Positions 6,002 through 20,612 are shown, numbered from the whole stretch's first letter. The stretch is DNA of 62,998 nt, filler included, from Octopus bimaculoides (GCF_001194135.2; 9 parts of 8 records of this genome joined end to end with filler, not necessarily neighbours in it); one strand, 5' to 3'. Translations and numbers: made by a program. The notes: generated by a model from the letters alone, not told the origin.

Positions 6002-6074
6002 TTCTTTTTTTTTAAAAGTCGATAGAAGTACCAACAGATCACCGGGGCTGATGTAATTGACTTAAGCGTCCCCA

Positions 6075-6232
6075 ACCTTTCGAGTTCTTTTACAGGACTT
6101 CGAAAAATTGAAGGACTGCTACCATAAAAGTATGTGAATTTGACAGGAGAATATGTTGAATAAAATCATAATTAACTGATCCTCCCGTTTTTACTTTTAC
6201 CCAAAACCAGGAACTTTTCATCATCCCCTTGC
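6075..6232 (+). mobile_element. Partial Tc1/mariner-derived MITE
   Basis: Same sequence as the right half of the 9372-9583 MITE (gaatatgttgaataaaatcataatta...ccaggaacttttca). Confidence 0.75.
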
Positions 6233-6693
6233 ACACACACCTATGTATTCGGTAATTTTACAAACACTGAAGCGACGATTTTCACAGATCAACTCAAAAT
6301 ATCAGGGTTGTTTCTCCTGCTTTTCTTGACCAGACTTGACCGTCATACTAATGAATATATCCCATAGATGTAATTATAATCAATCTAAATTACTTGGTCC
6401 ACTTCATTATGCAGATAGACATTCACTTGACCTCTTGAAAACAGTCTAATCGTTCGTATCTAAATTTTACACTTCAGTTCGTTCATTTACAATCTGATTA
6501 CCTTCAACTTCCTAAATTTAATACAGTTTACATATCTTGCCAGGATTTCATCCCAGAACATTATATTAGCGCGTCCTAGAACTATCAATGAATAAAGACT
6601 CCTGATGATGTTCGGAAATGCATTGAAGAAAATATATTCCTGAAAAATGATATTTAATAATTCAGAAATACAATTCTACACTAAAACATATAT

Positions 6694-7243
6694 AAGTAAT
6701 GTTTTGCCACTTCAACATGGCTGTTCCGTACGGAACTACGTTACTTCCATTTTTTTAAACCCAGGAGGACATCTCCAACTGGCTAACGACACAACCTGTG
6801 TCCGATATATTACGATCAGGGGAACGAACTCCTACCATCTCATGGTGACAAGACCAGCAGACCAGTCTGGTTTCAGAGCGATTCCCTTCGTCAGTACTGG
6901 AAACCTGTCTGCTAAACATGGTAGCCGTTCGTCCTAGCTCGCAGTATTTAGAAAAACAAACAACATTCAACCGCTGATTTTGCAACAAAGTAGCTAGTTC
7001 TAAAATCTCTATAAGAGATACAAGTAGGAACAATACTGAAAAGTAATGTTTGTTGCCGCTTCAATATGGCTGTTCTGTACAGAAATTCGTTACTACCATC
7101 TGAAGAAGATATCCTCCTGGAGTTAAAAAAATGGTAGTAACGTCGTTCCATACGGAACAGTTATGTTGAAGTGCCAACTAACATTAATCTTCAGTATTGT
7201 TACTACTTACACTTTTATAGAGATTTTAGATCTAGCTACTTTG
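6694..7243. mobile_element. HHR-bearing element with direct (period ~347 bp) and inverted terminal duplications; retrozyme- or Penelope-pLTR-like
   Basis: 6694-6750 recurs at 7041-7097; 6986-7099 is inverted against 7131-7243; 6694-6776 is inverted against 7103-7190; HHR inside. Confidence 0.7.
6847..6909 (-). ncRNA. Type I hammerhead ribozyme, canonical core, predicted cleavage after GUC (between 6860 and 6859)
   Basis: Minus strand reads GACAGG-UUU-CCAGUA CUGACGA AGGG-AAUCG-CUCU GAA ACCA-GAC-UGGU C UGCUGG-U-CUUGUC. All three helices pair and all conserved core nucleotides are present. Confidence 0.88.
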
Positions 7244-7247
7244 CTTA

Positions 7248-7271
7248 TACATACATACATACATACATACA

Positions 7272-7300
<29 letters not shown>
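7248..7300. repeat. (ATAC)n microsatellite
   Basis: Direct reading. Confidence 0.95.
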
Positions 7301-7304
<4 letters not shown>

Positions 7305-7373
7305 GTCAAATAAAATGAGACAGCAAAGCCGAGGCAGTGTGAAATTTCTAGGACATTTATAAAGAGAAAGGTA

Positions 7374-7421
7374 GTCTTACAGCTGTTTCAGGTATATAAA
7401 AGATATTCCATCATCAGAGAC
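7374..7421 (-). ncRNA. Minimal type I hammerhead motif (Penelope-type, palindromic AGCU loop III)
   Basis: GUCU CUGAUGA U-GGAAUAU-CUUUU-AUAUACC-U GAAAC AGCU GUA AGAC. Stem I GUCU/AGAC pairs; non-canonical U.U at the base of stem II. Confidence 0.7.
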
Positions 7422-7834
7422 GATGAGAGAGTTCAATAGAAAGAAATAGTAGAGTTCAATATAAGAAGTTATTTTGGAAAGGGAGAGATATAAGAAGTGT
7501 ACAAGAAAATATGAGAAAAAAATATATGTTGAATGTTAAAGTTGTTGTTCCATTATCCAAGGAATGAACTGTGTACAACGGGTAAAGAGGTTTCTTGTTC
7601 ATGGTATATAAATTCCGATAGGAGTTCATATTTTGTGATTACAACTGGATAGTGTGCAGATATTAATTCCATGTGCTATTCATTCAAAGGTATCTTGTAG
7701 TGTAATGGAACAGCAACTTTAACATTCAACATATTTTTTTTCTCATATTTCGTATACTTCCGATATCTCTCCCTTTCCAAAACAACTCCTTATATTGAAC
7801 TCTACTATTTCCTTCTATTTAACTCTCTCATATC

Positions 7835-7882
7835 GTCTTTGATGATGGGATATCTTTTATATCCCTGAAACAGCTGTAGGAA
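7835..7882 (+). ncRNA. Minimal hammerhead motif, inverted partner copy (C3U variant)
   Basis: GUCU UUGAUGA U-GGGAUAU-CUUUU-AUAUCCC-U GAAAC AGCU GUA GGAA; perfect 7-bp stem II. Confidence 0.6.
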
Positions 7883-8113
7883 AACCTTTCTCTTTATAAA
7901 TGCCCTAGAAATTTCACACTGCCTTGGTTTTGTTGTTTCATTTTATTTAACATATATATACGCTCTCACACGACGTGCATTAGACTCCTCACGCATACTA
8001 TTATCGAACCGGGAGTCTAATAGCGACCCTTCCGTAGCACTTACATAGCCATACCTACCTTTTGGGTCTTCTGGATACCAAAACCTCTCATATGTATTAT
8101 ATATGTATATATA

Positions 8114-8321
8114 GGCGCAGGCGTGACTATGTGGTAAGAAGCTTGTTTCCCAACCACATGGTTCAGAGTTCAATCCCACTGCGTGGCATCTTGGGCAAGT
8201 GTTTTCTTCAGTTGCCTCGGGCCGACCGATTTGTGAGTGGATTTGATAGACAGAAACTGATAGGTCGAAATGTGTGTGTGTGTGTGTGTGTGTGTGAGAA
8301 NNNNNNNNNNNNNNNNNNNNN

Positions 8322-8360
<39 letters not shown>

Positions 8361-8600
8361 CGTGTGTGTGTGTGTTTCTCCCACATCACTGCTTGACAAC
8401 CTGTGTTGGTGTATTTACGTCCCCGTAACTTAGTGGTTCAGCAAAAGAGACCGATAGAATAAGTACTAGGCTTTAACATAAGTGCTGGGGTCGATTTGTT
8501 CGACTAAACAAACCTTTCAAGGCGGTAATCCAGCATGGCCGCGGTCAAATGACTGAAACAAATAAAAGAATAAAAGAAAGTAAAAGAATATAAAAGAAAT
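8114..8600 (+). mobile_element. tRNA-derived CORE-type SINE family B with central (TG)n
   Basis: Head GGCGCAGG..TGTGGTAAGAAGC, B-box GTTCAATCCC, CORE-like CTTGGGCAAGTGT, 3' CAGCATGGCCGCGGTCAAATGACTGAAAC-AAAAGA tail. Confidence 0.9.
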
Positions 8601-9371
8601 ATGTTTTTAGTTTGGCAGAATTAATCATGGAGAATAAATCCAGTCTTTTTTTGATGACTGATCTCGCCCAAAGGTTACCCAACGCTCCCCTTATGTTTGT
8701 ATTTTAAATTGATTTGCACCGAAGCAGACAATAGTTAGCTTAACCACTCCAGTAATTATCAATTTCTAATCAGACATGTAGGAAACGTTCTCTCTTGTTC
8801 CACCATTATCTTATCTAAACGAACGAACGGTTTAATAATTATAACTGTAATTTATCATTTTCTTTCATTAGTATTATCGGTATGAACAATAAAACAATAA
8901 GGTAGGAACTAACATACTTAATATAGTGACTCAGAGCATTTTAATTATTTCAAACTACACCCTTAGTGACGAGATAAAAATATCATTAACTTAATAGTTA
9001 ATTTAGCAGATAGTGAAAAAGATAAATAGATGTTAATTCTGTTTTTTAGAATTTACGGGACACAAATCATGTCCAAGCTGGAAAAGTCGCTAAATACAAG
9101 TGATTTTGAAACATTTGTATATTACTTATGGTTCATCATTGTATATTAACATTAGCTAATCAATCGACCACAGACGAAAAGCAATGGAGATGTCGGTAAA
9201 ATTCGAACTCAAAAATAGAATGTCGAAAGAAAATGCTGTGAAGAGTAGAAGACCCTACCAACTCCCTGTATGCTGACCTCCAGATCTCACTTAAATTCAA
9301 GCTCCTTTCACACTGGTTCGCGAACAGTGTGTTGCAAGGAGTATCTGAATGCATCGCGAATATTTAAAAAC

Positions 9372-9583
9372 TACGATGGGGTGCTGAAAAGTTCCTGGCT
9401 TTAAGAGTGTCGCGAAAAGCCTGGTTGGAGGCCCAACCTTCCTAGTTCTTTTACAGGACCTAGAAAAACTGAAGGACCGCTACAGTGTGTGAATCTGAGA
9501 GGGGAATACGTTGTCTAAAATCATAATTAAGTGATCCTCCTGTGTTTTCTTTTTCACAAAACCAGGAACATTTCAGCACTCCA
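9372..9583 (+). mobile_element. Tc1/mariner-derived MITE
   Basis: TIR TACGA(T/G)GGGGTGCTGAAAAGTTCCTGG and its reverse complement; remnant of a mariner C-terminus (CVNLRGEYV). Confidence 0.8.
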
Positions 9584-10924
9584 GCTCTTCGAAACGCCTG
9601 TGTTAGAATGGTGGCAGCTGATGAAGGAAAATGTTCTCTATGTGGCCTGTGTGTTTTCTGTACTCTGGTTGTTATTATTTTTTTGTCTACGTTTTGTTTG
9701 CAACGTCCTGTACCCAGATATGCACCTATATATACAGGTAGATGTAGGTATGCACATACTTGTACGTATATATGCATATACTCATTTNNNNNNNNNNNNN
9801 NNNNNNNNNNNNNNNNNNNNNNNNNNNNNNNNNNNNNNNNNNNNNNNNNNNNNNNNNNNNNNNNNNNNNNNNNNNNNNNNNNNNNNNNNNNNNNNNNNNN
9901 NNNNNNNNNNNNNNNNNNNNNNNNNNNNNNNNNNNNNNNNNNNNNNNNNNNNNNNNNNNNNNNNNNNNNNNNNNNNNNNNNNNNNNNNNNNNNNNNNNNN
10001 NNNNNNNNNNNNNNNNNNNNNNNNNNNNNNNNNNNNNNNNNNNNNNNNNNNNNNNNNNNNNNNNNNNNNNNNNNNNNNNNNNNNNNNNNNNNNNNNNNNN
10101 NNNNNNNNNNNNNNNNNNNNNNNNNNNNNNNNNNNNNNNNNNNNNNNNNNNNNNNNNNNNNNNNNNNNNNNNNNNNNNNNNNNNNNNNNNNNNNNNNNNN
10201 NNNNNNNNNNNNNNNNNNNNNNNNNNNNNNNNNNNNNNNNNNNNNNNNNNNNNNNNNNNNNNNNNNNNNNNNNNNNNNNNNNNNNNNNNNNNNNNNNNNN
10301 NNNNNNNNNNNNNNNNNNNNNNNNNNNNNNNNNNNNNNNNNNNNNNNNNNNNNNNNNNNNNNNNNNNNNNNNNNNNNNNNNNNNNNNNNNNNNNNNNNNN
10401 NNNNNNNNNNNNNNNNNNNNNNNNNNNNNATCTACACATATGTATACATATACATGTATGCATATAGATCTATATCTATATATATCTATGCATATACGTG
10501 TACATATACACGTATATGTATACATATACATCTCTTTCTCTCTCTTTCTCTCTTTCTCTCTTTCTCTTTCTCTCTCTCTCTGAAAGAATCTGTCATTACA
10601 GTATCAAAATGTGATTGTTTCAGTTAGTGGAATAGTTTCATTTTTAAAGTGAAAGTATTTGACATGAGTGTTTTTGTTTCACTTTTGACACGTAATACTT
10701 AAATAGTGGAGGAGATATTATGTTGCCGTGGGCTCGAACTCTGCAAGAAGTTAAATTTTTTTTTGACTAAAACACAACTGGAACCCTAAGTAAGGCATCT
10801 GTAAAATTTGAATGAAATTGGTTGCGTAGTTCTCGAGTTTTAGGGATTCACACAGACAGACAGACAGACAGACAGACAGAAACATATTCTCATTTTTATA
10901 TATATAGATACACATACACACACA

Positions 10925-10959
<35 letters not shown>

Positions 10960-11732
10960 GTACACATTTTTACGGACATACATACATACAAAAAAAAACT
11001 ATAGATCATGCACAATTATATACTCATATGTACATTTTTTATTACTTTGTTTACTTCAGATGATTTCTTTGAAGTAGACTTCAAAGAATCCCCACCCACA
11101 CACACACACACATACACACCAATCCCCACCAATATTACGACGTACCAGCTGACCACTTACGCTTTATATTTCTTCTGTAAAGCCTAATATTTTTCATAAT
11201 CAATTTATTGAACCGTCGTCGGTTAGAATTAATGAAATTTGCACCTAAAGGCTATCTTATAAGAAATTCATTTGTATTTTTCATCATCATAAAAATAATA
11301 TAACGACAAAATATGACTACTGGGACAATAGCGTTCCAGAGTTAGTACGTCCCTTGAATAAATATTTACAAATATTGTCATTTCTTTGAAATGCCATATA
11401 AACCGAGAAAATGTATATAAAATACGTTACTATGTAAATAAATAAATAAATAAATAGACTAAACTTAATTGACTTAATAAAATAATGCAATTTCTAAGGA
11501 GAGTTGTAAACACGACCCACCTTATATAAGCAAGAGGCAAAACATCCGGCTGCCTTTGTTGCTGTCACTCGTAAAAAGATGATTCCATAGTTGTATGAAG
11601 TATTGAAGTCGAATTTGAATAGATATGGCTTTTGGGGACATATATATTTCTCAACTGCTTTTTAGATTCGACATATCTCTTCCAGAGGTCAAGAAAGATC
11701 AACTCTACTGTCGATATTTCTGAAATCATAGA

Positions 11733-11935
11733 AGGCGGTGAGCCGACAGAATCGTTAGCACGCCGGTTAAAATGCTTAGCGGCATTTCGTCCGTCTTCAC
11801 GCTCAGGGTTCAAATTCCGCAGAGGTCGATTTTTATCTTTCATCCCTTCGGGGATCAAAAAATTAGGTACCGGTTGAATACTCGGGTCGAAATAACCGAC
11901 TTACCCCTCCCCTAAAATTTTTGGCTCTGTGCAAT
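11733..11935 (+). mobile_element. SINE family A
   Basis: Family A head, B-box and central domain. Confidence 0.88.
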
Positions 11936-12070
11936 GGTTTTAAATTGCTTCAAGCCGTCTTTATTATTTTATATTTATCCCATTAACACTTCGGGAAATC
12001 AGTTCCTGATTTCTGTGACGTTTTCTATAATACTGACAGGCGTGATTTCCACTCCACCACCTGCCGTGGA

Positions 12071-12139
12071 GTAAGCATTACTGACGAGTATTAATTTAAT
12101 ATACAAAATTAACATGTTAATCTAATGCAGTTCGCTTAC
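12071..12139 (+). ncRNA. Type I hammerhead fold with G12A core substitution (position 12105)
   Basis: GUAA-GCAUUA CUGACGA GUAU-UAAUUUAAU-AUAC AAAA UUAAC-AU-GUUAA UC UAAUGC-AGUUCGC-UUAC. Three helices pair; GAAA is replaced by AAAA. Confidence 0.7.
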
Positions 12140-12328
12140 GGTGAGGTATGTTATCTCCTCTGTCAGTTCAAATAGAACATGTGATTTTTCTAGCAATGCT
12201 GGTGCTCATTGCACCCTTGGTCACTTTTAGTGACGATAAATTATTTCTTTTTTTATCTTAAATTTCTTCCAGTCACCTTAATTGTTTCATATTATAGTAT
12301 TATATATATGTGTGTGTGTGTGTGTGTA

Positions 12329-12510
12329 TCAGGACAATTACCTCCCCCATAGGACAATTCCCCCCCGACAACTACCCACGAGGACAATTACCACCTTTGG
12401 TTAATTACCCACTCTCCAATATATTTAGAAATTTTTAAAAATCATCTGTTGTCATCAGGGGCAATTGTCCTTGGCAGGTTATTGTCCATAGCGGGTAAAT
12501 GTCCTAGACT
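12329..12510. mobile_element. Small unclassified foldback/MITE with GGACAATT(A/G)CC subterminal repeats
   Basis: Several ggacaattacc/ggacaattccc units on the left and inverted ggggcaattgtcc/ggttattgtcc/ggtaaatgtcc units on the right. Confidence 0.55.
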
Positions 12511-12516
12511 TATAAC

Positions 12517-12591
<75 letters not shown>

Positions 12592-12609
12592 GGTGCAGAG
12601 ATATAGAAA

Positions 12610-13855
12610 TATGGTGGTGATCATCTTTGTGCAATGTTGACGGATGTGATTCAGAGGGTTTGGCAAAGTGAAGAGGTTCCTCCAGATTGGCGTGATACAA
12701 CTATGGAGATACTTTATAAATCTAAAAGTGGGAAAGATGTCTGTGATAATTATCGCGGCATCTGTCTGTCAGCTGTTACAGGAAAGGTCCTCTGTAGGAT
12801 AATGCTGGATAGATTGCTCCTGCACATTGCTGATGAGGTTCTGCGAGAATCGCAATGTGGCTTTAGGGATAGTAGGAGTACTATGGATATGATATTTTCG
12901 GCAAGACAGTTGCAAGAGAAGTGCATCGAACAGGATATGGACTTATATCATGTTTTCATTGACCTAACAAAAGCGTTTGATTCTATCAACAGAATTGCAG
13001 TTTGGGAGATCCTAAAAAAGCTAGGATGCCCTGAAAAACTTGTGAGAATGCTTAGACAATTTCATGACAAGATGGAAGTGAGAGTTAATGTTGGAGGTAC
13101 CTTATCTGTAGAAAATGGTGTAAAGCAAGGTGACATTCCTGCTCCTACACTGTTTGCTATATATTTCGCAATAGTCTTTCAAATAGTTTTTAAAGATTGC
13201 CTTGAAAGGGTCTATATAAGATATAGGATAACAGGAAAACTGTTCAATTTCAAAAGACTCTGTACCAAAACGAAAGTTCTGCATTCTCACCTTGTTCAGT
13301 TTCTGTATGCAGATAATTGTGACCTGTTGGCACATTCTCAGAAAGATATGCAGCACATGGTGAATGCGATTTCTGCAGCATTGGGTCTAACAATCAATCT
13401 AAAACACCTGTTATAATATACCAGCCCGCTCCCTCCAAGATGTATGTGGAACCTTTTATTACTGTGAATGGTCAAAGGTTGGAGACTGTACCTAGATTTA
13501 TTTATTTAGGAAGTACCTTGAGCACTGCTGATCTTGATGATGAAATTTCATACAGAATCAGTAGGGCTAGTAGTGCTTTTGGTAGGCTTGATAGGCGTCT
13601 GTGGAAATAACATAATATAGCTTCACAAATTAAAGTTAAGGTATATAACACATGCATCCTTCCATCTTTGCAATATGGAAGTGAGGCATGGGTTGTTTAC
13701 CCTAGGCAGGTAAGGCAATTGGAATGATTTCATCAATACTGTCTGAGAAAAATTTGGGGGATAAACTGGAAAATGGCCATTAGTAATGTGGAGGTGCTTG
13801 AGAGGATTGGCAGTAGAAGTATAGAGTCAATGATTTTGCAAAGACGTTTGAGTAT
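12610..13855 (+). pseudogene. RTE-clade LINE reverse transcriptase fragment
   Basis: ORF 12634-13416: NYRGICL, ESQCGFR..RST.DMIF..RQLQEKC, FIDLTKAFDS, GVKQG, GKLFN, YADN. Frameshifted continuation carries F.YLGS and YGSEAW motifs. Confidence 0.93.
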
Positions 13856-13859
13856 CGTC

Positions 13860-14279
13860 TTGGGCAAGAGTCTTCTACTGTAGCCTCAGACCGACAAAAG
13901 CCTGTGAGTGAATTTGGTGGGCAGAAACTGAAAGAAGCCCGTCGTGTATACATGTGTGTGCGTGTGAGAGAAACAGAGACAGGGAGAGAGACAGAGACAG
14001 AGAGAGAGACACAGAGAGAGACACAGAGACAGAGAGAGAGACAGAGACAGAGAGAGAGACAGGGAGAGAGACAGAGACAGAGAGAGAGACAGAGACAGAG
14101 AGAGAGACAGAGACAGAGAGAGAGACAGAGACAGAGACAGAGACAGAGACAGAGACAGAGACAGAGACAGAGAGAGAGACAGAGAGAGAGNNNNNNNNNN
14201 NNNNNNNNNNNNNNNNNNNNNNNNNNNNNNNNNNNNNNNNNNNNNNNNNNNNNNNNNNNNNNNNNNNNNNNNNNNNNNN

Positions 14280-14322
<43 letters not shown>

Positions 14323-14365
14323 GAGACAGAGACAGAGACAGAGACAGAGACAGAGACAGAGACAG

Positions 14366-14398
<33 letters not shown>

Positions 14399-14800
14399 CA
14401 GAGAGAGAGACAGAGACAGAGACAGAGACAGAGACAGAGAGAGAGACAGACAGACAGAGAAACGGAGACAGAGACAGGGAGAGAGAGAGAGACAGAGAGA
14501 CAGAGACAGAGAGAGAGACAGGGAGAGACAGAGAGACAGAGACAGAGAGAGAGACAGACAGACAGAGAGACAGAGACAGAGTGTGTGTGTGTGTGTCCCA
14601 CATCTCATCGCTTGACAACCCATGTTGGTGTGTTTACGTCCCCGTAGCTTAGTTCGGCAAAACAGACTGACAGAGTAAGTAACAGGCTTAAAAAATAAGT
14701 TGTAGGGTCGATTCGTTCGACTAAAATTCCTCAAAGCGTGCCCCAGCATGGCCGCAGTCTAATGACTAAAACGAGTAAAAGATTAAAAATAAAAGATAAG
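13860..14800 (+). mobile_element. 5'-truncated SINE family B with a ~600-bp (GA/GAGACA)n expansion in the middle
   Basis: CORE half at 13860-13960 and 3' half at 14595-14800 flank the repeat tract. Confidence 0.85.
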
Positions 14801-15000
14801 ATATTGTTTGTGTATTCGATATGAATAGGGTGTGTTTACAAAGTTCATATGTATTTTGTAGACGACATTTACATTGTATATTTGTCTAGTTGTGGCGCAC
14901 AGACTGTGTTGATCTAATTATTGCCTGCGCACATTTAGTTTATTCGGTAAGCTGAATGTCTAGTTGACATTTACTGGTAGTGTCTACCTGTTAAATATTG

Positions 15001-15209
15001 GTTTCAAGTTTTGGCACAAGGCCAGCATATTCGGAGGAGAAGGTAAGTCGATTACACCGACCCCAGTACTCAGCTGGTAATTATTTTATCAGCTCCGAAA
15101 GGATGAAAGGCAAAGTCGACCTCGGTGGAATTTGAACTTAACGTAAAGATGGATAAATGCCGCTAAGCTTTTTTTCCGGCAAGGTAACGCTTCTGCCAGC
15201 TCACCGCCT
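15001..15209 (-). mobile_element. SINE family A with 15-bp TSD
   Basis: ACCTGTTAAATATTG (14986-15000) versus ACTTGTTAAATATTG (15210-15224). Confidence 0.9.
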
Positions 15210-15376
15210 ACTTGTTAAATATTGTAATTATAGTAATCGAGGTGGGCGTGCTAATATCACTATAATCTAGAGTTATTGTCTTTATCATTACGATTCTAAA
15301 ATTAATTAAAACATTTTGTCATTCTTGTATACAGTCATTCTGCGACAATGGAGACAATTGAATGATGAGTCTGGTG

Positions 15377-15715
15377 CCGTGGTTCTCAATCGGGGCTCAT
15401 ATAAGATTTTTGGAGGTCCGCGCAAACAAAATAGTAATTTGGGGGTCAACAGTGTTATTTTAAGGGTCCATGAAAAAATTTTGTATTAGATGTATTTATT
15501 GCAAAAAAGCAGCTAGGTTTCTTTTTCTAACGCTTACCATAGTTCAACATTTTCTTGCTAACATATGCAAGCGAACGTGAGAAAAACTAAATAGGAATTT
15601 CGAAAGAAGTATCTAAAAGACTAGTTTTTTTTAAATATCGAATAGCTGTTGGGGTCCACCAGTATAAGATAGTAATCAAAAGGGTCCACAGATAACAAAT
15701 GGTTGAGAGCCACTG
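15377..15715. mobile_element. hAT-superfamily MITE
   Basis: TIRs C(C)GTGGTTCTCAA / TTGAGAGCCACTG; perfect 8-bp TSD GTCTGGTG at 15369-15376 and 15716-15723. Confidence 0.92.
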
Positions 15716-16752
15716 GTCTGGTGTATCACAATTTAAGCAAACTTAGAATAACTCTTAATCGTAACAATTCTGTTTACAAGAGTAAAATATGAATTGTTTT
15801 CAATTGCAAAACATCGCAAATATCGCCATGGTTCAGATACAATTTCACATAACCAAAAATTTGATCTGCCTTCTCTGTCCAGAGCAACACATTACATGGG
15901 TTCCTTATTTGTCAACTGTATTTGAGTAACAGCTTGTGCAGGAAGAGTATTTATTGCATGTTATCGTAAACTAATAGTCAATTTCGAACAAACTTTTACT
16001 AAGAAAAAACGAAACGTTTTTTTTTTTACAGCAAGGTTAATAGGTTCGTCTTTATTCGTGTGTCAACGTTTTCTGAGACAGAATTATGTATGTGTATTTA
16101 TATAAGCAGCTACAGAAAGAAAACGACAAACACCTACCTACAAACTCATTTGTTTCCTTTTACTCACGAGAAAATCATTTTTTAAGGTAACACAAGTGGA
16201 GTGAGAAGTGGGTAGATAAGAAACAGGACGCAAAATGAATGGAAGTAATGAAAAGGAAAAGAAAGGGAAAGAGGAGGGTGAGCGAAATGAAACAAAACAA
16301 CGAAAGATAGTGAAGTAAACTATTGAAAAGAATGATAAATAGGTAAGTAGTTGGAACTAAACGGAAATATGTGATATAAAAACTGATAAAATGTAGGGCG
16401 GGGATACAAACAAATAGTCATTGTCGATAGTCTGTATCAAGAACCAGTTGAAAGTACTGGCAACTCGGGCAGTTGTTCGGAGCACTATATTACAAAGTGA
16501 AAAAGCGTAAATAATAAATAAAACGAAATACAATCAAAATGAATAAAATTATGCGGTCTCCTGACTGAACTAGATACCACAAAAGAATTATTTCTAGATG
16601 AAAAGTTTCTATAGATGCCAATGTCATGCCAAAACTGTGAGTTGTATTATACATTACCAATAGCTGCGGCCACAATAGGGAGAGGTTTTATTAAACTAAA
16701 GTTTATAGGCATATTTACTGTTGTCTTTGACATTTTCCCAATGAAAAATAAT

Positions 16753-16966
16753 CTTTTCTATTATAGGCACAAGGCCTGAAATTCTGAGAGAGGGGGTAAG
16801 TCGATTACATCGACCCCAGTGCTCAACTGGCACGTATTACATCGACCCCAAAAGGATGAAAGGCAAAGTTGGCCTCAGCGGAATTAATACTCAGAACTTA
16901 TAAACGGACGAAATGCTGCTAAGCATTTTGTCCGGCGTGCTAACGATTATGCCTGCTCGCCGCCTT
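16753..16966 (-). mobile_element. SINE family A with probable TSD (tttcccaatgaaaa)
   Basis: Reverse-complement family A sequence with a near-identical flank on each side. Confidence 0.88.
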
Positions 16967-17110
16967 TCCCCAATGAAAAGTAATGTTAACCAGATTGACA
17001 TAGAAGCGTTCTGAAAGTATTTGCAGATCTGAAGTTGAGAGAAAACAAAGATGTTAGGATGATGTATGTTTTTCAGCACTTGTTCTTTTGCTCATCTATG
17101 TGATTATCTG

Positions 17111-19018
17111 GATGCTAGTATAGTATGCGGTCTACCACGTTGTCAAACAGTATAGCCAGGATTATCTACCTTAAACGTTCAGTTAATAATAAAGGAAACC
17201 AATTTTTCCATTATACAGGTGTAAGGGACGACCGTGCGAACTCAAAAAGGAGCAATGGTGACGAATGGAAAAACAGAGGACTCCTTTTATTTAGACGTGT
17301 CACACGGTCGAACACAAAAATATATATATCAATAATGATATAGATGATATGTTATACGACGATAACATAGATGACCAGTAATGAAAGACCACAACCGTAT
17401 TAGATGAATAACAGAGATATTTATTGTAGCGTTAAAGATGTATGTCTGTGTGTGAGTGTGAATGCGACATATAAGAACATTATCAAAGACAGGCCGTCAT
17501 ACAAAGAAAAGTGTGTATGTGAGTGATACATGTGTGTATGAGTGTTTACAGCAGATAGNNNNNNNNNNNNNNNNNNNNNNNNNNNNNNNNNNNNNNNNNN
17601 NNNNNNNNNNNNNNNNNNNNNNNNNNNNNNNNNNNNNNNNNNNNNNNNNNNNNNNNNNNNNNNNNNNNNNNNNNNNNNNNNNNNNNNNNNNNNNNNNNNN
17701 NNNNNNNNNNNNNNNNNNNNNNNNNNNNNNNNNNNNNNNNNNNNNNNNNNNNNNNNNNNNNNNNNNNNNNNNNNNNNNNNNNNNNNNNNNNNNNNNNNNN
17801 NNNNNNNNNNNNNNNNNNNNNNNNNNNNNNNNNNNNNNNNNNNNNNNNNNNNNNNNNNNNNNNNNNNNNNNNNNNNNNNNNNNNNNNNNNNNNNNNNNNN
17901 NNNNNNNNNNNNNNNNNNNNNNNNNNNNNNNNNNNNNNNNNNNNNNNNNNNNNNNNNNNNNNNNNNNNNNNNNNNNNNNNNNNNNNNNNNNNNNNNNNNN
18001 NNNNNNNNNNNATTTATAGCGTTAAGAGGGCTCCAAGACGGTGATAGAATTTTACTCTATCACGTGACCTTATTAGGGGCTGTGATTGGTCAGTTTGCGT
18101 TCTGGCGGGAACGGTTCGAAGAAGTTGCCGATTCGAATAATAATCAGTCACGTGATGACAAGAAATGGGTTCTCTACTACGCTCGCATTTATTTATATTT
18201 AAATGAGAAGATTGTATGTAATGGCGATAGTAGCTTGTATCTAATGGCGGGAGGTAGTTTCACTACACAGGCATTAACAGCAAATTAAACTGCAAGCTGA
18301 GCCTGAGTAAGATTTTAGAACTAATATTTTTCTTTGTCATGGATACACCCATAACCACAGCAGTGACTCTAACAGGAAAATCTACAAATACAATAACTGA
18401 CTGGTACAACATGTACCGCGAGGTGTATGGAGCCATGAACGGTGAGGGAAGATGGTCGGAACAAACGATAAACCCATTCAAATCGATGAAGCAAGATTTG
18501 ATGGTCGACGAAAATACAATCGAAGAAGAATGCTGAATGGCAACAACGTTCCTCTCTTCGAAGACAGTGATGCAGAACCACGAAACGACAGGAACCATGG
18601 ACGTATGATTGATGGGCCGTGGGATTTTGGTCTCAAACAAGGCTCAGACTGTCGATACTTTTGTGTGGAACGGCGTAACGGGAACAGTCTGATCCCAATT
18701 ATTGAGAGAGAATGTGGAAAGGGTTCAGTAATTCATTTAGATGAGTGGCCCGCTTATAATAACTTAAATGCCATAGGTTATCACCATCTGACAGAGGAAC
18801 CATCAATGACATTATGTGGATCCAGTGACCGGAACACACACTCATGCCATTGAGTGATCATGGTTAGAAACTAAAACTATGATTCCTGAAATAGCTGAAG
18901 ATTTTTAATCTCTGAAATATCTGAAGTGTTTTAACTCTGAAGTATCAGGAAATATCTTAAACGTAAGGTAAATAACCCTGTTTGACATCGTGGTAGACTG
19001 CATACTATACTAGCACCA
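17111..19018 (+). mobile_element. Merlin (IS1595/ISXO2-like) DNA transposon, full-length but decayed
   Basis: TIRs G(A/G)TGCTAGTATAGTATG..GTCTACCACG.TGTCAAACAG at 17111-17150 and 18978-19018; (T/A)TATCTG on both flanks; subterminal CTGAA(A/G)TATC repeats; internal N gap 17559-18010. Confidence 0.88.
18339..18890 (+). pseudogene. Merlin/IS1595-like DDE transposase, frameshifted
   Basis: TITDWYNMYRE; IQIDEARFDGRRKYNR; GPWDFG; RRNGNSLIPIIE...GSVIHLDEWPAY; degenerate ERSW after the frameshift. Confidence 0.88.
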
Positions 19019-19387
19019 TAATCTGCTTGTTCATTCATCCATTATACTTTACTTAGTTACAGTGGTGGAGGTGGTGTGAGTGACAAGTGGAGAGGGGGAG
19101 AAGTATGAGCAAAGAAAAAAGAAGTGAGAAAGAAGTAAAGATGTATAATAAGGCCAAATGCGTCACGTGGTTAGTTCAAGGGAGAGGCGAAGAGCGAGAG
19201 AAAAAAGACGGTGAGAGAAAAGAGAGAGAGAGAAGTATTAACGACGTGCTGTAGAGTAGGGAGTGAAAGGTACAGAGTAAGCGATATGTTTAGGATACAA
19301 TATTTAGCAGAGGATGATGTTCTGGTGATGAGGCTAAAGAAAGAGAGACAGAGAGAGATAGACAGGAGTGGCAGTTACATTGAGAGA

Positions 19388-19445
<58 letters not shown>

Positions 19446-19902
19446 CAGACAGCGTTTGCATTGTCAGTAACAGTAAGAAAAAATAAATAGTTGAACTGAA
19501 ATGAAATGAGTTTTGTTACTGAAAACTACAGTGATGATGATGATGGTGGTGGTAGTGGCTTAGGTGGTGGTGGGTGTTGATAGTGAAAGTATCTTTTTAT
19601 TGAACTAAATCTATAATATTATTCTTCTATCTGCTCGTTCACACTTTATGCTTTAGTTTGTTAGAGAGGAGGAGGAAGTGAAGTGAGAGAGATAGGAAGA
19701 GGGAATGTGAGAGTGAGTGAGAGAGCAGATAACCAGCCGATGCATTATGCTGTCACTCATGTGGTTAGTGGAAGTGGGAGGTGAAGAGAAAGAGAGAAAT
19801 CTTAAAGACATGAAGAGGGGAATTACATGGTTAGAAAGTTGGTTGATGTAGAAGAGAAGAGAGAAATACAAAGCACTTAGCAGAGGGAAATTTTAATATC
19901 AT

Positions 19903-20612
19903 CTATCTATAATATATATAAAACAGAGATGTGTGTGTAATCGCTTATCACGTGAAAACGGTTTCACTATTTACTTCCATACTTGTGATGCAGGAATAAT
20001 TTGACCTCGGATAAATCTTAGGCTCTTCATTTGATTTTTTTTATTAAGATAAATAATATTGCTTTATATTTAAGATTCACTTCTTTAAAAATGTTCCTCA
20101 ATGTCAACTTCCAGTAGCCATAATTTTTTCTTCACTTTAACTTCAATCGTTACTGTTCGCACTAAAAGTTTACTCACATTTACTGATGTAAGTAATTTCA
20201 TCATTTACTAACAGAAGTACGGTTTCGTGTTTCCCTNNNNNNNNNNNNNNNNNNNNNNNNNNNNNNNNNNNNNNNNNNNNTTAATTAATTAANNNNNNNN
20301 NNNNNNNNNNNNNNNNNNNNNNNNNNNNNNNNNNNNTTTTAGAGCTCCATGAGCTCCATTTTGCAGGAGCAAAATCTTTTTCACAGGTTCCAGAAGACTG
20401 AAATTTTGGAATATGCGCATAAAGATCAATAGTATGGGATACATGTCTCATGATTAGAATTTTTTAGGGTGTGTAAAGAGGGAAAGAACCCTCATGTGCA
20501 ATTTTGATGAAATTCGAATCATATGTATTCCAGTTCCTTACAGAAAATATAACAGAAAAGTCTCATTTTTCAATTGCATGTAACACGGGCAACGCCGGGT
20601 ATCTCTGCTAGT
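19903..20612 (+). mobile_element. Probable non-autonomous Helitron-like element spanning a spacer
   Basis: TC-initiated TCTATCTATAATATATATAAAAC start near 19903; 3' GC-rich CGGGCAACGCCGGG followed by CTAG near 20585-20612. No TIR or TSD seen. Confidence 0.45.

What the first reader, a model, noticed from the sequence alone, without database searches (positions are those of the whole stretch)
6847..6909. Textbook extended type I hammerhead ribozyme in apparently intergenic DNA
Seen: the minus strand reads GACAGG-UUU-CCAGUA CUGACGA AGGG(AAUCG)CUCU GAA ACCA(GAC)UGGU C|UGCUGG-U-CUUGUC. It has an intact CUGANGA/GAAA core, a GUC cleavage triplet, a 4-bp stem II, a 4-bp stem III, and a 6+6-bp stem I with an asymmetric internal loop. 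Known: a stem I bulge contacting loop II characterises fast natural HHRs. Inference: this copy should self-cleave as a monomer. G.U pairs in three helices suggest the fold rather than the sequence was conserved.
Basis: partly seen in the sequence, partly recalled or inferred. Interest (0 to 1): 0.85.

Follow-up and report, generated by a model that had tools for sequence, protein, structure and literature searches.

The report
Hammerhead ribozyme in octopus retroelement
The motif is a genuine type I hammerhead self-cleaving RNA, but it sits inside a roughly 350-base mobile repeat that is scattered through octopus genomes, a kind of element already known from many other animals, so it is a real but fairly ordinary find.

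Summary
The sequence is exactly as described: on the minus strand, 6909->6847 has an intact hammerhead (HHR) core, a 6+6 bp stem I with a 3/1 internal loop, a 4-bp stem II, a 4-bp stem III, and predicted cleavage at 6860/6859. No Rfam hammerhead model reports it, even at E<=10. A covariance model built only from four experimentally tested animal retrozyme hammerheads ranks it first in the piece (23.8 bits, E~2e-5).

It is not free-standing. It lies at the tip of a long hairpin inside a 347-nt, 43% GC non-coding unit (7040->6694). That unit is arranged as a partial tandem plus a head-to-head inverted copy beside a microsatellite, the insertion style of Penelope-like elements (PLEs).

Two diverged homologues of the unit (~50% identity) turned up in about 63 kb of Octopus vulgaris and O. 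bimaculoides DNA. Both carry the motif at the same place. Across the three copies, 91% of helix positions pair and 9 pairs show compensatory changes. The two relatives have core mutations (G8A; C3U+G8A).

Verdict: a real type I hammerhead of a retrozyme-like, PLE-style non-autonomous retroelement family. It is a new member of a known kind. Self-cleavage and circular RNA are untested.

The parts
6847..6909 (-). Complete type I hammerhead motif (63 nt), from distal stem I to distal stem I
   Evidence: Direct reading; energy of the hammerhead fold is -15.5 kcal/mol; family model R2 aligns it end to end.
6888..6894 (-). Core box CUGACGA (C3-A9). N7-G8 is a CpG.
   Evidence: G8 is A in both relatives. 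The piece has CpG observed/expected 0.70.
6875..6887 (-). Stem II AGGG/CUCU (A-U, G-C, G.U, G-C) with loop 2 AAUCG
   Evidence: A10.1 is present in all three family copies. Stem II shows only one-sided changes.
6861..6874 (-). GAA (G12-A14) followed by stem III ACCA/UGGU with a GAC loop (A15.1-U16.1 closing pair)
   Evidence: Stem III is 2-4 bp in the relatives, has low ensemble probability, and is not recovered by RNAalifold.
6859..6860 (-). Predicted cleavage site: after C17 (6860) and before U1.1 (6859)
   Evidence: Position follows from the hammerhead numbering applied. Not tested experimentally.
6895..6900 (-). Proximal stem I, 5' strand CCAGUA, pairing with 6854-6859 UGCUGG
   Evidence: Four of its six pairs show both-side changes among the three copies.
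6901..6903 (-). Internal loop of stem I, 5' side UUU, opposite the single U at 6853
   Evidence: The same 3/1 geometry occurs at the same offsets in the relatives: UGU/U in L026 and UAC/U in L025.
6815..6940 (-). Long hairpin with the hammerhead at its tip. The outer helix pairs 6916-6932 with 6824-6840.
   Evidence: Minimum-energy fold of 161 nt. RNAalifold on three homologues gives 31 pairs, 18 with compensatory changes. Pairing checked directly.
6694..7040 (-). One full 347-nt unit of the repeat (GC 0.43). The ribozyme cuts after unit nucleotide 181. The 3' end ...AACATTACTT abuts TA-rich DNA.
   Evidence: nhmmer homology to L025 and L026; unit ends defined by the tail-to-head junction.
7041..7099 (-). 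3' part of a preceding unit, joined tail-to-head to the full unit (partial tandem)
   Evidence: blastn: 7041-7099 matches 6694-6750 at 85%. Junction is AACATTACTT|TTCAGTATTG.
7103..7245 (+). Inverted, 5'-truncated partial copy, head-to-head with the main copy. It contains the same tail-to-head junction and ends at the microsatellite.
   Evidence: (I9, I14).
7247..7301 (.). (ATAC)14 microsatellite abutting the 3' end of the inverted copy
   Evidence: Tandem Repeats Finder.

Best explanation
The motif is a genuine type I hammerhead ribozyme. It belongs to a roughly 350-nt, non-coding, low-GC retroelement family that is dispersed in octopus genomes: a retrozyme-like, non-autonomous element of the kind mobilised by Penelope-like elements (PLEs).

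Shown here:
- The core is intact.
- The element is homologous to copies in O. vulgaris and O. bimaculoides.
- The ribozyme sits at the same place in each copy, at the tip of a long hairpin.
- Stem I, the outer hairpin and stem II stay paired despite about 50% sequence divergence.
- The insertion architecture is PLE-like: partial tandem, a head-to-head inverted 5'-truncated copy, and microsatellite flanks.

Inferred:
- When the minus strand is transcribed, the RNA folds around CUGACGA/GAAAC/GUC. The 3/1 internal loop of stem I docks on loop 2, and the 2'-OH of C17 (6860) attacks its own 3' phosphate. This leaves a 2',3'-cyclic phosphate on one product and a 5'-OH on U 6859.
- In multimeric transcripts of master copies, two such cuts would release a 347-nt RNA. 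A host tRNA ligase (RtcB type) could circularise it, and a PLE reverse transcriptase could copy it back into (TA)n-type microsatellites.
- This locus has one ribozyme in about 1.2 units plus an inverted fragment. It is most likely a dead-end insertion that happens to keep an intact core. It could cut a read-through transcript once but could not release a unit.
For: - Core and helices were read directly.
- Model R1, built from coral, mussel and axolotl retrozyme hammerheads (sequences from the supplement of PMC7229834), ranks the candidate first in the piece: 23.8 bits, E 2.3e-5, matched over the full model length.
- Unit homology: a local alignment to L025 scores 56, against 24.4 +/- 3.4 for shuffles. 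nhmmer gives E 1e-7 to 1e-59.
- The three copies were cut at identical offsets from the core. 91% of cells pair, 9 pairs change on both sides, and 0 of 500 shuffles reach this. Slid controls give 25-41% paired and at most 1 compensatory pair.
- RNAalifold independently recovers both parts of stem I, stem II and an outer helix; 18 of 31 pairs are compensatory.
- Core letters are conserved far above the ~50% background: GAAAC and GUC are identical in all three copies, with only 1 and 2 core substitutions in the relatives.
- Architecture: a partial tandem and an inverted copy in the window; the same inverted 5'-truncated copy in L026, and (TA)n flanks in L025 and L026. This matches the PLE insertion pattern described in PMC8557442.
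- Unit size and GC (347 nt, 0.43) fit metazoan non-LTR retrozymes: 150-450 bp and GC below 45-50% (PMC7229834, PMC7761336).
- No coding capacity was found.
- PLEs are a recognised TE order in O. vulgaris (PMC13282606).
Against: - No Rfam hammerhead family reports it, even at E<=10.
- The 10.1-11.1 pair is A-U.
- Stem III is thermodynamically weak, and the hammerhead fold is 2.1 kcal/mol above the predicted minimum.
- Only three copies could be compared. Two of them have A at the essential G8, so simple parsimony would allow an A8 (inactive) ancestor. My counter-argument is that N7-G8 is a CpG in a CpG-depleted genome.
- No tandem array with two ribozymes was seen.
- No autonomous PLE is in the window. 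The only reverse transcriptase is a LINE type, 6 kb away on the other strand.
- No expression or cleavage data exist.
Confidence: 0.8

Rival explanations
1. It is real by descent but catalytically dead. The motif derives from a hammerhead-bearing ancestor, yet this copy, or the whole family, cleaves poorly or not at all. Possible reasons are the A10.1-U11.1 pair, the weak stem III, the competing CCAGU/ACUGG pairing, or an ancestral A8.
For: - The 10.1-11.1 pair is A-U in the window and L025, and A.A in L026.
- Stem III has about 2% ensemble probability, and the minimum-energy fold is not the hammerhead fold.
- G8 is A in two of the three copies.
- An axolotl hammerhead with a U.U at the base of helix II cleaved only 22% in an hour as a monomer (PMC7229834).
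Against: - Helices stay paired with many compensatory changes over about 50% divergence. That needs selection on the fold in the master lineages.
- A10.1 is shared by all copies, so the family spread with it.
- This copy has every essential core nucleotide.
- The 4-bp helix III is longer than in invertebrate hammerheads that cleave well as monomers.
Confidence: 0.15
2. It is a chance match to the hammerhead descriptor inside an unrelated hairpin-forming repeat.
For: - A 6/4/4-bp descriptor is expected a few times by chance in a 2.7-Gb genome (extrapolated).
- Rfam is silent.
- The 63-mer is no more stable than shuffles.
Against: - About 2e-5 such matches are expected in this piece.
- The same core, at the same place, occurs in two ~50%-identical homologues from two species, with GAAAC and GUC identical.
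- The 3/1 internal loop geometry is conserved.
- Other hammerhead-like motifs are frequent in octopus DNA: 4 hits with E of about 1e-3 or below in roughly 76 kb.
Confidence: 0.03
3. It is a host-domesticated regulatory ribozyme, like the amniote intronic HH9/HH10 or the mammalian 3'-UTR hammerhead, kept at this particular locus for a host function.
For: The core is intact here and mutated in the two other copies seen.
Against: - The surroundings are transposon debris and microsatellites, with no host gene detected.
- The copy carries the scars of an ordinary PLE-style insertion.
- No orthologous locus could be examined.
Confidence: 0.02

Closest known systems
Metazoan non-LTR retrozymes with canonical type I hammerheads (Cervera & de la Pena 2020, PMC7229834; for example the coral Amil224 and mussel Mg353 units)
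   Same: - Type I hammerhead with a 6-bp proximal stem I, a 4-bp stem II and a real helix III.
- Non-coding unit of about 350 nt with GC below 45%.
- No LTR, PBS or PPT.
- Tail-to-head unit junctions.
- An invertebrate (mollusc) host.
- The candidate scores 23.8 bits on a model built from these ribozymes.
   Different: - Here the copies are solo or partial-tandem insertions, not arrays of dimers to multimers.
- No circular RNA evidence exists.
- The 10.1-11.1 pair is A-U.
- No sequence similarity outside the ribozyme.
- The family is not described in the literature I could search.
Penelope-like element pseudo-LTR hammerheads (Cervera & de la Pena 2014, PMC4209133; Arkhipova lab, PMC8557442)
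   Same: The insertion architecture: a partial tandem, a head-to-head inverted 5'-truncated copy, and microsatellite targets.
   Different: - PLE hammerheads are minimal, with almost no helix III and no loop-loop contacts, and are thought to act as dimers. This one has a 4-bp helix III and the stem I internal loop.
- No RT/GIY-YIG ORF is present.
- A motif of that minimal type does occur next door, at 7372-7423.
'Solo retrozymes' / monomer derivatives in vertebrates (Li, Clavereau & Pollet 2026, bioRxiv 10.64898/2026.07.22.740005)
   Same: Single full-length units dispersed in intergenic DNA, interpreted as non-mobile offspring of active tandem retrozymes that derive from PLE pLTRs.
   Different: That survey covers vertebrates only. 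The relationship to an octopus PLE pLTR was not tested here.
Schistosoma Sm-alpha satellite hammerhead (the structural model for extended type I hammerheads)
   Same: From my own knowledge, not tested here: a proximal stem I of 5-6 bp, then an asymmetric internal loop (UAC on the 5' strand) that contacts the loop of a 4-bp stem II. L025 has exactly UAC/U at that place.
   Different: - Different loop sequences in the window copy (UUU/U; loop 2 AAUCG).
- A-U rather than G-C at 10.1-11.1.
- Unrelated flanks.
Rfam Hammerhead_1 (RF00163) and the other Rfam hammerhead families
   Same: The same ribozyme class, judged by core and topology.
   Different: No match at gathering score or at E<=10. None of the octopus hammerhead-like motifs is reported either.

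Membership tests
Hammerhead ribozyme, type I | Catalytic centre CUGANGA / GAAAY / RUH (the descriptor used by de la Pena's group, supplement of PMC7229834) | tested here: met
   CUGACGA / GAAAC / GUC read directly; found by my own descriptor scan.
Hammerhead ribozyme, type I | Three helices around the core, with helices II and III closed by loops and helix I open (type I topology) | tested here: met
   Stem I has 6+6 bp, stem II 4 bp and stem III 4 bp.
Hammerhead ribozyme, type I | Significant match to a covariance model of experimentally active animal type I hammerheads | tested here: met
   Model R1 (coral, mussel and two axolotl ribozymes) gives 23.8 bits and a rough E of 2.3e-5. It is the top hit of the piece.
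Hammerhead ribozyme, type I | Operational criterion: score at or above the gathering threshold of an Rfam hammerhead family | tested here: not met
   No hammerhead hit at gathering score or at E<=10. This is a database criterion, not a biological one. Published surveys of animal hammerheads use structure descriptors instead.
Hammerhead ribozyme, type I | Typical but not defining: a G10.1-C11.1 pair at the base of helix II | tested here: not met
   A-U here. A10.1 is present in all three family copies. Natural active exceptions exist, such as U.U in axolotl HHR_Amex2, which has reduced monomer activity.
Hammerhead ribozyme, type I | Helices supported by covariation among homologues | tested here: met
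   Stem I has 9 pairs with both-side changes. Stem II has one-sided changes only. Stem III is uninformative. Only three sequences were available.
Hammerhead ribozyme, type I | Site-specific self-cleavage 3' of H17 | not testable with these tools
   Needs in vitro transcription and a cleavage assay.
Metazoan non-LTR retrozyme | Type I hammerhead inside a non-coding repeat unit of about 150-450 bp with GC below 45-50%, and no LTR, PBS or PPT | tested here: met
   Unit is 347 nt with GC 0.43. ORFs in all six frames have no homologues.
Metazoan non-LTR retrozyme | Tandem arrangement, so that two ribozymes flank a unit | tested here: not met
   One ribozyme in the window. There is only a partial tandem of 1.17 units, with a tail-to-head junction seen twice. 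L025 is a solo unit, and L026 is one unit plus an inverted fragment. I therefore file it as retrozyme-like (solo or partial-tandem derivative), not as a demonstrated retrozyme array.
Metazoan non-LTR retrozyme | Multi-copy family in the genome | tested here: met
   Two further copies in about 63 kb of O. vulgaris and O. bimaculoides DNA.
Metazoan non-LTR retrozyme | Unit-length linear and circular RNAs in vivo | not testable with these tools
   No transcriptome access.
Autonomous Penelope-like element | ORF with a PLE-type reverse transcriptase and a GIY-YIG endonuclease | tested here: not met
   No such ORF was found. The only RT fragment (12634-13416, plus strand) is a LINE type, 89% identical to an O. 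bimaculoides protein with RVT_1 and Exo_endo_phos domains.

The most novel reading that the evidence does not exclude
The family is an abundant, still active cephalopod retrozyme. A rough extrapolation from 2 copies in about 63 kb suggests on the order of 10^4 to 10^5 copies per genome. Its master copies would be tandem, would express roughly 347-nt circular RNAs in octopus tissues, and would be mobilised by an octopus Penelope-like element. The window copy, with its intact core, would be a young insertion. This would add a previously unannotated ribozyme and circular-RNA component to octopus genomes, where retroelement activity in the nervous system is under discussion.
Probability: 0.15. Interest if true: 0.55.

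Novelty: new member of a known kind. Interest (0 to 1): 0.3.

Why it matters
Type I hammerheads in animal repeats have been known since 1987, and retrozymes since 2016-2020, so the class is not new.

What the finding adds:
- A cephalopod family with a canonical hammerhead, probably able to act as a monomer. Rfam does not detect it, and a 2026 repeat annotation of O. vulgaris that I searched mentions neither ribozymes nor retrozymes.
- A natural, evidently successful hammerhead lineage with A-U at 10.1-11.1.
- A clear case where PLE-style insertion scars accompany a canonical rather than minimal hammerhead. This bears on the proposed descent of animal retrozymes from PLEs.

It is also a practical warning: covariance-model annotation with Rfam thresholds misses such ribozymes.

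Tried and rejected
- Rfam. cmscan on the piece at gathering score, then at E<=10 on 361 nt and on 77 nt, gave no hammerhead. Only junk miRNA and snoRNA matches below threshold appeared. Rfam on five eukaryotic loci gave only a U6 and a tRNA.
- Copies through spurious ORFs. I searched the 96-aa ORF and an 873-aa concatenate of all six reading frames of the element against the 5.8-billion-protein collection.
- Pattern scans. CCAGTACTGANGA-N(8-24)-GAAACCAG returned 16 loci from JGI metagenomes and 6 from prokaryotic genomes. All were chance matches or coding repeats, and none was a hammerhead.
- ENA contigs. Loci reached through LINE RT relatives (L002, L027-L030) are not octopus and hold no family member.
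- A tRNA-derived SINE: ARAGORN finds no tRNA-like gene.
- A nearby autonomous PLE: the only RT is a LINE type.
- Source contig: a lookup through the window's own 260-aa ORF found nothing on record.
- More family members: model R2, run with filters off on 83 kb of octopus DNA, found only the three known copies.

Full report
**Observation.**
All invariant hammerhead positions are present: C3-A9, G12-A14, the A15.1-U16.1 pair and C17. C17 is base 6860, so the predicted scissile bond is 6860/6859. A descriptor scan of both strands finds no second motif of this quality in the window.

**Is it more than chance?**
I scanned 40 Mb of first-order Markov sequence with the piece's composition. A loose descriptor (stems >=3/3/2) hit 10 times, and stems >=5/4/4 hit none. 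Each additional pair costs about x0.38. The observed 6/4/4 quality is therefore expected about 8e-4 times per Mb per strand. That is about 2e-5 in this piece, but a few times in an octopus-sized genome. The motif alone does not prove a ribozyme.

**Points against 'textbook'.**
- The 63-mer is no more stable than shuffles (z = -0.58).
- The hammerhead fold (-15.5 kcal/mol) lies 2.1 kcal/mol above the predicted minimum.
- Stem III has about 2% ensemble probability.
- The pair at the base of stem II is A-U, not the usual G-C.
- Rfam reports no hammerhead at gathering score, or at E<=10 on 361 nt or on 77 nt.

**An independent model.**
I took the four retrozyme hammerheads whose self-cleavage was measured in PMC7229834: coral Amil224, mussel Mg353, and axolotl Ax353 and Ax330 (sequences from its supplement). 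I aligned them and built covariance model R1 without the candidate. With filters off, the candidate is the top hit of the piece: 6854-6900 (-), 23.8 bits, rough E 2.3e-5, matched over the whole model. It also satisfies the published descriptor 'CUGANGA / GAAAY / RUH with perfect helix topology'.

**Genome and neighbourhood.**
The piece is eukaryotic, with microsatellites, assembly gaps and dispersed repeats. An RT fragment at 12634-13416 (+) is 89% identical to an Octopus bimaculoides LINE protein with RVT_1 and Exo_endo_phos domains. Other repeats match O. bimaculoides and O. vulgaris DNA at 70-91%. The source is therefore an octopod genome.

**Local architecture.**
The ribozyme lies in a structured repeat:
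- a full 347-nt unit at 7040->6694 (-), GC 0.43;
- 59 nt of the 3' end of another unit before it (7099->7041), joined tail-to-head as AACATTACTT|TTCAGTATTG;
- an inverted, 5'-truncated copy facing it head-to-head (7103->7245, +), which carries the same junction and ends in (ATAC)14.

PMC8557442 describes this pattern for Penelope-like elements (PLEs): partial tandems, an adjacent inverted 5'-truncated copy, and microsatellite targets.

**Relatives.**
Protein-based tricks and pattern scans of metagenomes and prokaryotic genomes gave nothing useful. I then fetched about 63 kb of octopus DNA around LINE genes, and this held two homologues of the unit.
- L025 (O. vulgaris OX597815.1), 5640->5293 (-), is flanked on both sides by (TA)n.
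- L026 (O. bimaculoides CM046623.1), 14328->14022 (-), ends in (TA)n. An inverted 5'-truncated copy faces it head-to-head at 14333->14445 (+).

Homology is significant. The local alignment score is 56, against 24.4 +/- 3.4 for shuffles, and nhmmer gives E down to 6e-59 with the three-sequence profile. Pairwise identity is nevertheless only about 50%.

**The ribozyme in the relatives.**
Both relatives carry the motif at the same place. L026 reads GGUGAU-UGU-CGUACG-CUGACAA-AGGG(UAAAUA)UCCA-GAA-AC(UCAG)GU-C-CGUGCA-U-AUCAUG. L025 reads UCUGAC-UAC-GCUGCA-UUGAUAA-AGGG(CAACAA)CUCU-GAA-ACAUGU-C-UGCAGA-U-GUCUGA.

I cut all three at identical offsets from the core, so nothing was tuned per sequence. The imposed hammerhead structure then gives these counts:
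- 91% of cells are paired.
- 9 pairs change on both sides, all of them in stem I.
- 0 of 500 shuffles reach these values.
- Sliding the 3' partners by 1-3 columns drops pairing to 25-41%, with at most 1 compensatory pair.

RNAalifold, given 122-126 nt from each copy and no structure, independently recovers distal and proximal stem I, stem II and a further outer helix (window 6916-6932 with 6824-6840). Of its 31 pairs, 18 are compensatory. It does not recover stem III.

The 6 bp / 3-1 internal loop / 6 bp geometry of stem I is identical in all three copies (UUU/U, UGU/U, UAC/U). GAAAC and GUC are invariant, and A10.1 is shared. So the fold and the core were under selection while the family diversified. 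The A-U at 10.1-11.1 is a family trait, not decay.

**Core status.**
Only the window copy has a complete core. L026 has G8A, and L025 has C3U and G8A. Because two of three copies have A8, an inactive ancestor cannot be formally excluded. However, N7-G8 is a CpG, and the piece shows CpG depletion with TpG and CpA excess (0.70, 1.12 and 1.17). Independent G8 loss in dead copies is therefore the more likely reading.

**Whole-unit folds.**
The unit RNA folds with the ribozyme at the apex of a long hairpin. The window unit is marginally more stable than shuffles (z = -1.9) and the L025 unit clearly so (z = -6.5). This fits the highly self-paired structures reported for retrozyme RNAs.

**Mechanism.**
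Shown: an intact type I hammerhead, conserved by fold, inside a dispersed non-coding unit of about 350 nt that bears PLE-style insertion scars.

Inferred from the retrozyme literature (PMC7229834, PMC7761336, bioRxiv 10.64898/2026.07.22.740005):
- Multimeric transcripts of master copies self-cleave at each ribozyme.
- The unit-length RNA is circularised by a tRNA ligase and copied back into the genome by a PLE reverse transcriptase.
- Solo units are non-mobile offspring.

The tail-to-head junction is present in both the direct and the inverted copy of the window. This fits a multimeric or circular template. At this locus there is one ribozyme, so only a single cut of a read-through transcript is possible. 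Monomeric activity is plausible, because helix III has 4 bp and invertebrate retrozyme hammerheads with a stable helix III cleave as monomers. It is unproven, given the A-U pair and the competing fold.

**Context and novelty.**
Hammerhead-like motifs are frequent in the octopus DNA I could see.
- A second, minimal PLE-like motif lies 500 nt away, in an inverted-repeat element (7372-7423, 17.9 bits).
- Further hits occur in L001 and L025.

PLEs are a recognised TE order in O. vulgaris. A 2026 repeat annotation of that species mentions neither hammerheads nor retrozymes, and a full-text search for hammerhead plus octopus found no description of such elements.

The finding is therefore a new member of a well-known kind. 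It is real, and it is useful as an annotation and as a natural 10.1-11.1 A-U variant. It would not surprise a specialist.

Noticed in passing
window 7296-7960: A 665-nt inverted-repeat element (arms 7296-7555 and 7703-7960, 89% identical) sits directly beyond the (ATAC)14 microsatellite. Its left arm holds a second hammerhead-like motif at 7423->7372 (-): UCGUCU CUGAUGA U-GGAAUAU(CUUUU)AUAUACC-U GAA ACAGCUGU A AGACUA, scoring 17.9 bits (E 1.4e-3) on R1. The mirror copy on the plus strand (about 7833-7884) has UUGAUGA and no stem I. The motif is of the minimal PLE or amphibian type: palindromic helix III, U.U at the base of helix II, and a GUA triplet.
   Followed up: partly
L001 18919-18973 (-); L025 18682-18761 (-) and 12654-12697 (+): Further hammerhead-like motifs in O. 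bimaculoides and O. vulgaris DNA, unrelated in their flanks to the family studied. Examples are CUGAUGA UGCC..GGCA GAAACA..UGUC at 24.4 bits, and CUGAUGA..GAAACCGGUA CUGCAU. They suggest that hammerhead-bearing elements are common in octopus genomes.
   Followed up: partly
L002 near 12156 (-), 14236 (+) and 16156 (-): A eukaryotic contig from an ENA metagenome assembly (ERZ25067903, not octopus) carries three copies of CTGACGAGTGTCGGACGAAA[C/A]AAGCTTTCAGT. This looks like a minimal PLE-type hammerhead with a palindromic helix III.
   Followed up: no
window 12634-13416 (+): A LINE reverse-transcriptase fragment (RVT_1, E 5.6e-23). It is 89% identical to O. bimaculoides LOC106881952, which also has an Exo_endo_phos domain. 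This is what identifies the source as an octopod.
   Followed up: partly
window 18452-18853 (+): A 133-aa ORF with a weak ISXO2-like DDE transposase domain (PF12762, E 8.7e-7), probably a DNA-transposon remnant.
   Followed up: no
window 8103-8575 and 13849-14790; 6071-6223 and 9432-9578; 14993-15209, 16746-16966 and 11732-11932: Several dispersed SINE-like repeat families, each with two or three copies in the piece, that also occur in octopus loci. The last family forms a tandem array of about 220 bp per unit in L001 (16630-17482).
   Followed up: partly
window 12066-12135 (+): A weak hammerhead-like match (GCAUUA CUGACGA ... AAAA ... UCUAAUGC; 15.1 bits on R1 and 12.5 on R2). It has A in place of G12, so it may be a decayed relic or a chance match.
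   Followed up: no
L026 16898-16990 (-): A U6 snRNA match above the Rfam gathering score (57.2 bits) in O. bimaculoides DNA, with internal deletions. It is probably a U6 gene or pseudogene.
   Followed up: no
window 6002-20236: CpG observed/expected is 0.70, with TpG at 1.12 and CpA at 1.17, which indicates methylation-driven CpG decay. The piece also has assembly gaps (N runs) at 8301-8321, 9788-10429, 14191-14279 and 17559-18011.
   Followed up: partly
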